A DNA stretch of 64,000 bases. Source: Euprymna scolopes (Eukaryota). Under the pieces are notes generated by a model. It was given only the letters and a program-made list of their open reading frames with translations. It ran no database searches and was not told where the DNA came from. The stretch is taken from assembly GCA_053919585.1 (NCBI GenBank), contig CM132798.1; one strand, 5' to 3'. This document shows, in pieces, positions 59,153-60,349 of this stretch; position 1 is the first letter of the stretch; each line of letters opens with the position of its first letter. Made by a program: the position numbers and the translations under genes.

Positions 59153-60349
59153 GGATTTATTTGCTTCCCCACTGAGCAAATTAGGCACAGGGCCGTTTTT
59201 TAATGTGGAGATAGGGGGAGGGAAAGGGGGACCAGCTCCCGAGAGGAGGGAAATGGGAGCTGGATTAGAAACTGTTGGTATGAAGTGTTGCCCTTTTCAG
59301 TGACCAAGGTCAGATATTTATTTGCTTCCCCACTGAGCAAATTAGGAACAAGGCCGTTTTTTAATGTGGAGAGAGTGGGAGGGGGGAGGGAAAGGGGGAT
59401 CCAGCTCCCGAGAGGTGGGAAATGGGAGCTGGATTAGTAACTGTGGTCTGTAGGGTGATTCCTACGTTGACCAAGTTCAGATATGTGGGGTTACGCCCAC
59501 ATATGGTCTTTGCTAGTCATAGCTAGTATTTGCTTGCAGCATCTGTCGGAACAGATGGTATTTATTTGCTCCCCCACTGAGCAAATTAGGCACAAGGCCG
59601 TTTTTAATGTGAGGTAAAAACCAGCTCCCCTTAAAGTAGGCAAAAAGGGGGCACTCTGGTTACCAAAAAAAATAATTGTCCCAGTATAGAGGGTTTCCCC
59701 TCCATTGACTGGTACAAATTATCTTAAGTGCAGCATCTGTCGGAACAGATGGTATTTATTTGCTCCCCCACTGAGCAAATTAGGCACAAGGCCGTTTTTA
59801 ATGTGAGGTAAAAACCAGCTCCCCTAAAAGTAGGCAAAAAGGGGTCACTCTGGTTACCAAAAATAATAATTGTCCCAGTATAGAGGGTTTCCCCTCCATT
59901 GACTGGTACAAATTATCTTAAGTGTAGTATCTGCCGGAACAGATGGTATTTATTTGCTCCCCCACTGAGCAAATTAGGCACAAGGCCGTTTTTAATGTGA
60001 GGTAAAAACCAGCTCCCCTAAAAGGGGTCACTGTGGTTACCAAAAATAATAATTGTCCCAGTATAGAGGGTTTCCCCTCCATTGACTGGTACAAATTATC
60101 TTAAGTGCAGTATCTGCCGGAACAGATGGTATTTATTTGCTCCCCCACTGAGCAAATTAGGCACAAGGCCGTTTTTAATGTGAGGTAAAAACCAGCTCCC
60201 CTAAAAGGGGTCACTCTGGTTACCAAAAATAATAATTGTCCCAGTATAGAGGGTTTCCCCTCCATTGACTGGTACAAATTATCTTAAGTGCAGCATCTGC
60301 CGGAACAGATACTACACTTTGATCTTGTCCCCCGTACCACGGAGGGCCC
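59153..60349 (-). mobile_element. TSD-flanked non-coding tandem array of six structured units with a U2 snRNA-derived leader
   Basis: 18-bp TSD ccctaactataatctgtg at 59135-59152 and 60350-60367. Units start (plus strand) at 59155, 59316, 59560, 59754, 59948 and 60131 and share a ~50-bp box atttatttgctYccccactgagcaaattaggMacaRggccgtttttaatgtg. Confidence 0.93.
60303..60326 (-). ncRNA. U2 snRNA fragment (about nt 23-46, branch-site recognition region); not a full gene
   Basis: Minus strand AAGATCAAAGTGTAGTATCTGTTC equals the invertebrate U2 sequence as recalled, including GUAGUA. Confidence 0.85.

What the first reader, a model, noticed from the sequence alone, without database searches (positions are those of the whole stretch)
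59535..60326. Each full-length unit carries an antisense-to-U2 branch-site segment whose variants are all G-U compatible
Seen: plus-strand aagtgcagcatctgc (60286-60300), aagtgcagtatctgc (60103-60117), aagtgtagtatctgc (59920-59934), aagtgcagcatctgt (59726-59740) and tgcagcatctgt (59535-59546), versus U2 AAGTGTAGTATCTGT. All differences are T>C on plus, i.e. A>G in the minus RNA, turning A-U into G-U and never breaking a pair. Unit 6 folds back on the leader as a 15-bp hairpin with a UCCG loop. Inference: this points to the minus strand as the functional RNA and suggests selection for pairing with U2's branch-site recognition region. Possible roles are masking it in the chimeric transcript, guiding target recognition, or binding cellular U2 in trans. 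An alternative is ADAR A-to-I editing of the stem before reverse transcription.
Basis: partly seen in the sequence, partly recalled or inferred. Interest (0 to 1): 0.88.

Follow-up and report, generated by a model that had tools for sequence, protein, structure and literature searches.

The report
Fold-back hairpin of U2-headed retroposon
The short "anti-U2" stretches are the shared front end of a very abundant jumping element that lands in a copied piece of U2 spliceosomal RNA and folds back on it; their letter differences are common family variants that leave the hairpin intact but do not show that the element binds the cell's own U2.

Summary
All four 15-mers, the 12-mer and the minus-strand U2 15-mer sit where stated, and unit 6 pairs with the U2 leader as a 15-bp hairpin with a UCCG loop.

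The stretch is a 1197-bp stack of non-coding retroposon units (59153-60349, read on the minus strand). It has a 24-nt U2-derived head and an 18-bp target-site duplication inside a decayed reverse-transcriptase gene. The scan has met this family (SINEU/Keno-like, a mollusc genome) and this hairpin in other windows of the same genome.

Raw DNA reads put the anti-U2 segment at roughly 50,000 copies, shared by at least three unit types. The three T/C sites are standing family polymorphisms: T about 7% at position 6, 43-53% at position 9 and 10% at position 15.

At the loop-closing position, pair-breaking variants (C>A 12%, deletion 13%) are as common as pair-keeping ones. "All G-U compatible" is expected by chance about 1 time in 3 to 10.

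Inside the window, A/G changes are concentrated in this arm (3 of 6 A columns against 0 of 45, a post hoc test). That fits recorded A-to-I editing or arm-to-arm correction better than selection.

PolyA RNA holds both strands. Binding of cellular U2 in trans has no support. I read the hairpin as a 5' module of the retroposon's own cycle.

The parts
59153..60349 (-). 1197-bp insert: a stack of six non-coding retroposon units behind one U2-derived head
   Evidence: TRF finds a 183-bp period with 3.6 copies. No other copy lies in the window.
59135..59152 (.). Left copy of the 18-bp target-site duplication (CCCTAACTATAATCTGTG)
60350..60367 (.). Right copy of the 18-bp target-site duplication
58852..59152 (+). 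Decayed LINE reverse-transcriptase ORF, the part before the insert (RVT_1 profile 7-54)
60451..60720 (+). The same decayed reverse-transcriptase gene, the part after the insert (RVT_1 profile 85-164)
60327..60349 (-). 23-nt GC-rich 5' extension that is not U2-like; a rare form of the head's upstream end
   Evidence: depth falls from about 17,500 to about 440, and the majority letters differ at 60330, 60335, 60336 and 60339.
60303..60326 (-). U2 snRNA-derived head, ending at the ...GUAUCUGUUC insertion site
   Evidence: (alignment to Rfam U2, one extra A). One search lists no variant here at about 17,500x.
60301..60304 (-). UCCG loop, which is the junction of the U2 sequence (UC) with the element's first letters (CG); very variable in the family
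   Evidence: 60301 C>A 26%, 60302 G>A 18%, 1-nt deletions 12-13%.
60286..60300 (-). Anti-U2 segment of unit 6 (sense GCAGAUGCUGCACUU), the 3' arm of the 15-bp hairpin
60103..60117 (-). Anti-U2 segment of unit 5
59920..59934 (-). Anti-U2 segment of unit 4
59726..59740 (-). Anti-U2 segment of unit 3
59535..59546 (-). 12-nt anti-U2 core of a different unit type (unit 2)
   Evidence: loose ends at 60289 show this type is abundant.
60120..60127 (-). AUCUGUUC repeat at the unit 6 / unit 5 junction, a copy of the U2 target end. The same 8-mer lies at 59937-59944, 59743-59750 and 59549-59556.

Best explanation
The 15-nt segments are the conserved 5'-terminal module of a very abundant, non-coding retroposon family that targets a U2 site. 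The family resembles SINEU and depends on a Keno/Utopia-type LINE; it is read on the minus strand. Each copy lands just after ...GUAUCUGUUC of a U2-derived head. Its first letters therefore lie opposite the U2 branch-site recognition sequence, and in the sense RNA they fold back on it as a 12-15-bp hairpin whose loop is the insertion junction. Inferred, by analogy with R2, whose 5' end pairs with upstream 28S sequence: the hairpin serves the element's own cycle. It would give a stable, defined 5' end that keeps the target-derived leader on the template, so that the cDNA can anneal upstream of the cut and make a precise 5' junction. Shown: the T/C differences between units are standing family polymorphisms at three purine sites of the sense strand, and they cost the hairpin nothing. 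They are tolerated, and are probably produced by a process acting on the hairpin. They are not evidence that the element is selected to bind cellular U2.
For: Insertion anatomy: an 18-bp TSD splits one RVT_1 gene. The head matches U2. AUCUGUUC is repeated at every unit junction.

Family size and sharing: raw DNA reads at about 0.33x coverage give a depth of about 18,000 on 60289-60321 and about 22,000 on the 3' module. Loose ends at 60286 and 60289 show at least three different unit bodies joined to the same anti-U2 core.

Hairpin: it is predicted in the minimum-energy and centroid folds. All eight A/G variants fold at -20.4 to -20.7 kcal/mol on the sense strand.

Polymorphisms in DNA: 60294 C>T 43%; 60111 (unit 5, same site, reference T) C 26%; 60108 C>T 6.6%; 60300 and 60117 C>T 10%. 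A second species shows similar shares (run X7).

The junction letters are the most variable (60300-60302), as expected of 5' junction formation.

Literature: Keno and Utopia target this same U2 site (PMC4640811). R2's 5' end pairs with upstream 28S, and target sequence carried on the RNA gives precise junctions (PMC3774820). A stable 5' fold improves R2 template function (PMC11331408).
Against: The role of the hairpin in retroposition is inferred and was not tested. Unit 1 and the 3' part of unit 2 belong to a unit type that lacks the anti-U2 segment, so the segment is not indispensable. No ribozyme family matches, and a 4-nt loop does not fit the HDV-like topology, so the R2 analogy is functional only. 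The partner LINE and its 5' end were not available here. Conservation in a young, high-copy family does not by itself show selection.
Confidence: 0.55

Rival explanations
1. Recorded RNA editing. The hairpin of the RNA intermediate is edited A-to-I by ADAR at particular adenosines, and reverse transcription fixes G in new copies. The A/G sites would then be a mutational footprint, not a selected feature. This can coexist with the best explanation.
For: Among four near-identical units, A/G variation hits 3 of 6 A-holding columns of the segment and 0 of 45 elsewhere (p 0.001). Segment columns vary 3/15 against 3/168 (p 0.008). Sense position 7 is homoplastic with respect to the 11-nt indel that groups the units. 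The two internal variable sites are both UAC, and by general knowledge ADAR favours a 5' U. Family-wide, sites with a sense-strand A/G change outnumber U/C sites 36 to 17 (p 0.013). The host is a mollusc, said in earlier notes to be cephalopod-like, and heavy editing is known in that group (general knowledge).
Against: The tests are post hoc on four units. The head's adenosines show no listed variant. In stranded RNA the lower T share at 60294 (20% against 43% in DNA) appears equally in both read directions, which points to expression of particular copies rather than editing. In the internal-junction context the shift goes the other way. Fifteen bp is short for ADAR. The polarity, A>G or G>A, is unknown.
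Confidence: 0.25
2. Arm-to-arm correction. The head and the anti-U2 arm form an imperfect palindrome. Mismatch correction or gene conversion in a DNA or cDNA hairpin flips exactly the mismatched positions between G and the U2-complementary A.
For: The variable sites are exactly the three positions where the arms are not Watson-Crick, and they toggle only between the two states expected. The head is invariant, as a donor would be.
Against: There is no direct evidence. Internal units have no adjacent head. The loop-closing position also shows C>A and deletions that conversion does not predict.
Confidence: 0.1
3. The segment is kept by selection to pair with the U2 branch-site recognition sequence, either to mask the leader in the chimeric transcript or to bind cellular U2 in trans.
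For: A 12-15-nt complement covering GUAGUA is present in at least three unit types. Every common internal variant keeps pairing. The sense hairpin energy is unchanged by the variants.
Against: No covariation is possible because the head is invariant. The compatibility pattern has p about 0.1-0.3. Pair-breaking variants together reach about 24% at position 15. The segment is more variable than its surroundings. Some unit types lack it. PolyA RNA holds sense and antisense about equally, as for passive read-through. Nothing bears on binding in trans.
Confidence: 0.12
4. A neutral relic. A one-off inverted duplication of the target sequence arose at the 5' end of an ancestral element, was inherited by all derivatives, and is decaying by ordinary transitions.
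For: The density of common variants in the segment (2 in 15) is like that of the body and the 3' module (about 11 in 162) in DNA reads. The family is young and high in copy number, so sharing needs no selection.
Against: I could derive no simple target-primed reverse-transcription route that makes an inverted copy of the upstream target. The module is kept across unit types whose bodies are unrelated. Differences are concentrated in this arm among otherwise identical units.
Confidence: 0.15

Closest known systems
SINEU (SINEs with U1/U2 snRNA-derived heads; Kojima 2015, PMC4494074)
   Same: A short non-coding retroposon with a 5' head copied from U2 snRNA. It has a TSD and a high copy number, and is thought to be moved by Tx1-type LINEs. 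How it is transcribed is an open question.
   Different: SINEU is described only from crocodilians. There the heads were added by template switching and the elements prefer a Mariner transposon. Here the head ends at the Keno/Utopia insertion site, units stack behind it, and the element's first 12-15 nt are antisense to the head. That paper does not report such a feature.
Keno (Tx1 clade) and Utopia (RLE) U2 gene-targeting non-LTR retrotransposons (PMC4640811)
   Same: The same target region of U2 (TGTAGTATCTG / TCTGTTCTT). Tandem insertions occur (Utopia-1_NVit). 5' junctions are variable and 3' junctions precise.
   Different: Those elements are autonomous and of low copy number, living in U2 genes. 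These are non-coding units at tens of thousands of copies outside U2 genes that carry their own target. The paper has no mention of a hairpin or a ribozyme.
R2 5' end and the non-autonomous R2 SIDEs (PMC3774820, PMC3414825, PMC11331408)
   Same: The element's 5' sequence pairs with the upstream target-gene sequence in the co-transcript. Target sequence kept on the RNA gives precise 5' junctions. A stable 5' fold helps the template. Internally deleted derivatives keep both ends.
   Different: R2 forms an HDV-like double-pseudoknot ribozyme with a roughly 7-bp P1 whose strands lie at least 23 nt apart. Here there is a plain 15-bp hairpin with a 4-nt loop and no match to any ribozyme family.
ADAR-edited fold-back repeats
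   Same: An intramolecular duplex with A/G differences restricted to one strand's adenosines.
   Different: Known substrates are usually longer duplexes, and the editing is read in RNA. Here the differences are in DNA copies, and present-day editing was not shown.

Membership tests
SINEU-like snRNA-headed retroposon | 5' head derived from U1 or U2 snRNA | tested here: met
   24 nt at 60303-60326 (-) align to Rfam U2 positions around the branch-site recognition region with one inserted A. The exact U2 15-mer is present.
SINEU-like snRNA-headed retroposon | Short, non-coding, retroposed (TSD), dispersed in many copies | tested here: met
   An 18-bp TSD splits an RT gene. Only ORFs of 61 aa or fewer are present, and the one searched (58 aa) has no homologue. 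Depth is 15,000-22,000x at about 0.33x coverage.
SINEU-like snRNA-headed retroposon | 3' tail shared with a partner LINE | not testable with these tools
   There is no partner LINE in the window and other windows are not readable. Earlier notes claim a Keno-like partner; I did not check this.
Keno/Utopia-dependent U2-site element | Insertion at the specific U2 site with a precise 3' junction | tested here: met
   The head ends at ...GTATCTGTTC, and each unit's 3' end is followed by ATCTGTTC. The site agrees with the motifs quoted in PMC4640811.
U2 snRNA gene | Reaches the Rfam U2 gathering score over the full length | tested here: not met
   18.3 bits against a gathering score of 46, E 0.89. 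The unit body alone gives no U2 match.
HDV-like or other self-cleaving ribozyme at a retrotransposon 5' end | Match to a ribozyme model, or a nested double pseudoknot with P1 strands separated by P2/P3 | tested here: not met
   No relevant ribozyme match at E up to 1 over 58500-61000. The only ribozyme-type row in the unit-body scan is a chance-level RAGATH-13 match on the opposite strand (16 against 80 bits). The two arms are separated by only 4 nt.
RNA structure under selection (covariation) | Compensatory changes on both sides of pairs | tested here: not met
   The head arm is invariant in the window and has no listed variant in about 17,500x of reads. Only one-sided A/G changes occur.
ADAR substrate with editing recorded in DNA | A>G only, in a duplex, in excess over other adenosines, with an RNA against DNA difference on the sense strand | tested here: inconclusive
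   The in-window excess is 3/6 against 0/45. The RNA and DNA shares differ, but equally in both read directions, and they are confounded by copy-specific expression.

The most novel reading that the evidence does not exclude
The three purine sites would be a heritable record of site-selective A-to-I editing of the leader/anti-leader hairpin in the retroposition intermediate. Each round of copying could then write an RNA edit into the genome, ratcheting A-U pairs into G-U pairs across tens of thousands of copies of a mollusc retroposon. In this reading the fold-back itself would be kept because it hides the branch-site recognition sequence of the many U2-headed transcripts.
Probability: 0.15. 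Interest if true: 0.65.

Novelty: new variant of a known kind. Interest (0 to 1): 0.38.

Why it matters
If the fold-back is a working part of the element, it shows a second, ribozyme-free way for a site-specific retroposon to use pairing between its own 5' end and the target-derived leader. It also helps to explain how snRNA-headed SINEs keep and reuse their heads. If the A/G sites are recorded edits, the family would be a natural read-out of RNA editing written back into DNA. As it stands, the finding adds a detail to a family this scan has already met many times. It gives no evidence that the element interferes with the spliceosome.

Tried and rejected
Searches for more copies all came back empty:
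- Exact-pattern scans of metagenome, viral and prokaryote genome collections with the head-junction motif and with the conserved 3' module found nothing.
- A look-up of the 58-aa spurious ORF that spans the segment, and a search for its homologues, found nothing.
- blastn of the three unit types against the window found nothing outside the array.

Explanations I rejected:
- A U2 pseudogene or a U2-derived body: only the head matches U2.
- A self-cleaving ribozyme: no relevant family match, and the topology does not fit.
- CpG decay for the three sites: none of them is in a CpG; the CpG is in the loop.
- RNA against DNA read shares as a test of editing: the stranded libraries show strong copy-specific expression. 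For example, 60300 C>A is 30% in RNA against 12% in DNA, and 164/304 against 2/407 by direction in X22.

I considered, but could not support, two further ideas:
- RNA-guided target pairing by the segment: its cDNA is parallel to the upstream top strand, not complementary to it.
- The plus-strand copy of the segment acting as an inverted target mimic.

Full report
**What is there**

The U2-identical 15-mer lies on the minus strand at 60305-60319. The pattern occurs five times in the window against 0.02 expected by chance.

They belong to a 1197-bp insert, 59153-60349. An 18-bp direct repeat (59135-52 and 60350-67) bounds it. The two flanks are adjoining parts of one decayed reverse-transcriptase gene, RVT_1 profile 7-54 and 85-164.

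Read on the minus strand, the insert has these parts, in order:
- 23 GC-rich letters that are not U2-like.
- A 24-nt U2-derived head (60303-60326). Rfam aligns it to the branch-site recognition region of U2 with one extra A. The whole match scores only 18 bits, against a gathering score of 46.
- Six units. Four are near-identical 183-194-nt units, and two are of another type.

Every unit ends ...AAAUAAAUACC and is followed by AUCUGUUC, the last eight letters of the head. The next unit then begins CG + anti-U2 segment.

The body of a unit alone gives no U2 match. No relevant ribozyme family matches; the only ribozyme-type row is a chance-level RAGATH-13 match on the opposite strand.

**The hairpin**

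The minus-strand RNA of head plus unit 6 folds with the predicted 15-bp stem and UCCG loop. The minimum-energy and centroid structures both show it (-89 kcal/mol, z -6.4).

The loop is the junction itself: UC is the end of the U2 sequence and CG is the start of the element.

All eight A/G combinations at the three variable sites give -20.4 to -20.7 kcal/mol on the minus strand. The plus-strand transcript of the same DNA falls to -9.9. This asymmetry agrees with the head orientation and the unit polarity: the element's RNA is the minus strand.

**The family**

No further copy could be fetched from any sequence collection. I therefore laid raw reads on head plus unit 6 plus the next junction, 60080-60400.

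Run X44 is raw Hi-C DNA of the same species label. Depths were:

| Stretch | Depth |
|---|---|
| 3' module | about 22,000 |
| 60289-60321 (12-nt core, junction and head) | about 18,000 |
| This unit's body | about 7,500 |

That means tens of thousands of copies. Loose ends at 60286 (4,106 reads) and 60289 (7,735 reads) show two other unit bodies joined to the same anti-U2 core. So the segment is a shared 5' module of at least three unit types.

One type lacks it: unit 1 and the 3' part of unit 2.

Earlier reports of this scan describe the family in other windows as a U2-headed, SINEU-like retroposon. They say it stacks at its own U2 site and has a Keno-like LINE partner. First readers noted the fold-back in several windows. 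I could check the copy number, the TSD and the junction anatomy, but not the LINE.

**The variants**

In DNA reads the three sites are standing polymorphisms:

| Segment position | Window place | Share in DNA reads |
|---|---|---|
| 9 | 60294 (head-adjacent) | T 43% |
| 9 | 60111 (internal junction, reference T) | T 74% |
| 6 | 60108 | T 6.6% |
| 15 | 60300 and 60117 | T 10% |
| 15 | 60300 | C>A 12%, 1-nt deletion 13% |

Pooled over both contexts, position 9 is about 50:50. Contigs of a second species (X7) show similar shares.

The loop letters vary by 18-26%. This is what imprecise 5' junction formation produces.

No variant is listed in the head. The tool showed only the 40 best-supported of 115 variant rows, so rare variants in the segment remain unknown.

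The family majority, C at positions 6 and 15, is itself not the perfect complement of U2.

**Does this show selection for pairing?**

It does not. The head is invariant, so there is no covariation.

In this arm 10 of 15 possible transitions would give G-U. Three compatible changes out of three therefore have p about 0.3, or about 0.09 with transversions counted.

Family-wide, pair-breaking variants are common at the loop-closing position.

Among the four near-identical units the segment is more variable than the rest, not less: 3 of 15 columns against 3 of 168 (Fisher p 0.008). The three changes outside the segment are all transversions. A/G variation hits 3 of 6 A-holding columns in the segment and 0 of 45 elsewhere (p 0.001).

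Sense position 7 conflicts with the 11-nt indel that groups the units. So either the change recurred or the 5' modules were reshuffled.

These tests are post hoc and rest on four units. Even so, they point to a process that acts on this arm. One candidate is A-to-I editing recorded at reverse transcription. Both internal sites are UAC, and sense-strand A/G sites outnumber U/C sites 36 to 17 in the family (p 0.013). The other candidate is correction between the two arms of the palindrome.

**RNA evidence**

The RNA reads cannot decide between these.

The T share at 60294 is lower in RNA (20% in X24, 28% in X22) than in DNA (43%). But it is equally low in both read directions of a library that is clearly stranded. 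In the internal-junction context the shift goes the other way. Other sites show large expression effects specific to single copies.

PolyA RNA holds both orientations of the element, at about 1:1 over the hairpin and 1:2 over the 3' module. That looks like passive transcription inside longer RNAs.

**Mechanism**

Shown:
- The insertion anatomy.
- The shared 5' module.
- The hairpin's strand asymmetry.

Inferred: the fold-back serves the retroposon's own cycle. In R2 the element's 5' end pairs with upstream 28S sequence in the co-transcript. Target sequence retained on the RNA lets the cDNA anneal upstream and gives precise 5' junctions (PMC3774820). A thermodynamically stable 5' fold improves template use (PMC11331408).

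Here the pairing is a plain hairpin, not a ribozyme, so the likeness is in function only.

Keno and Utopia are the known LINEs that hit this U2 site (PMC4640811), and SINEU is the known class of U2-headed SINE (PMC4494074). Neither paper reports an anti-target fold-back.

Binding of cellular U2 in trans remains possible, but nothing tested here supports it.

**Verdict**

It is unsupported on selection for U2 pairing.

This is a new variant of a known kind, of moderate interest. The interest would rise if genome-wide analysis shows recorded editing.

Noticed in passing
window 60327-60349 (-): The head of this copy is preceded by 23 GC-rich letters that are not U2. Only about 2% of family reads continue into them, and the majority letters differ at four places. 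In polyA RNA the commonest continuation is instead a longer U2-like leader (loose ends at 60327 and 60331).
   Followed up: partly
runs X25-X28: Four runs labelled 'microbial mat metagenome' hold about half of the sampled words of head plus unit, as do six further coded organisms (B, D-H). The family, or DNA of its hosts, is therefore present well beyond the source species.
   Followed up: no
window 59153-59546 (-): Units 1 and 2 are a different unit type with a long C/U-rich stretch. Unit 2 looks composite: a 64-nt piece that begins with the anti-U2 core and ends in a hairpin, then AUCUG, then a unit-1-like body.
   Followed up: partly
window 60149, 60172, 60211: Family-wide majority letters differ from this array at several places in DNA reads (60149 T>C 68%, 60211 T>G 62%, 60172 T>A 38%). 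The four units here therefore belong to a minority subfamily.
   Followed up: no
window 3983-4729 (-) and 13931-14416 (-): One ORF has a DDE_3 transposase domain (E 1e-12) and another has DUF5641 (E 1.5e-10). The second lies among several ORFs without a Pfam match at 13.9-18.3 kb. These are other mobile-element remnants.
   Followed up: no
window 915-1060, 35531-35672, 36417-36578, 47295-47461, 55974-56111, 58171-58352, 63415-63580: Seven runs of N, each 138-182 letters. One lies inside the decayed LINE just upstream of the insert. I left them as they are.
   Followed up: no
window 61756-61812 and 57875-57945: An (AT)28 microsatellite, and a 30-bp tandem repeat of 2.4 copies.
   Followed up: no
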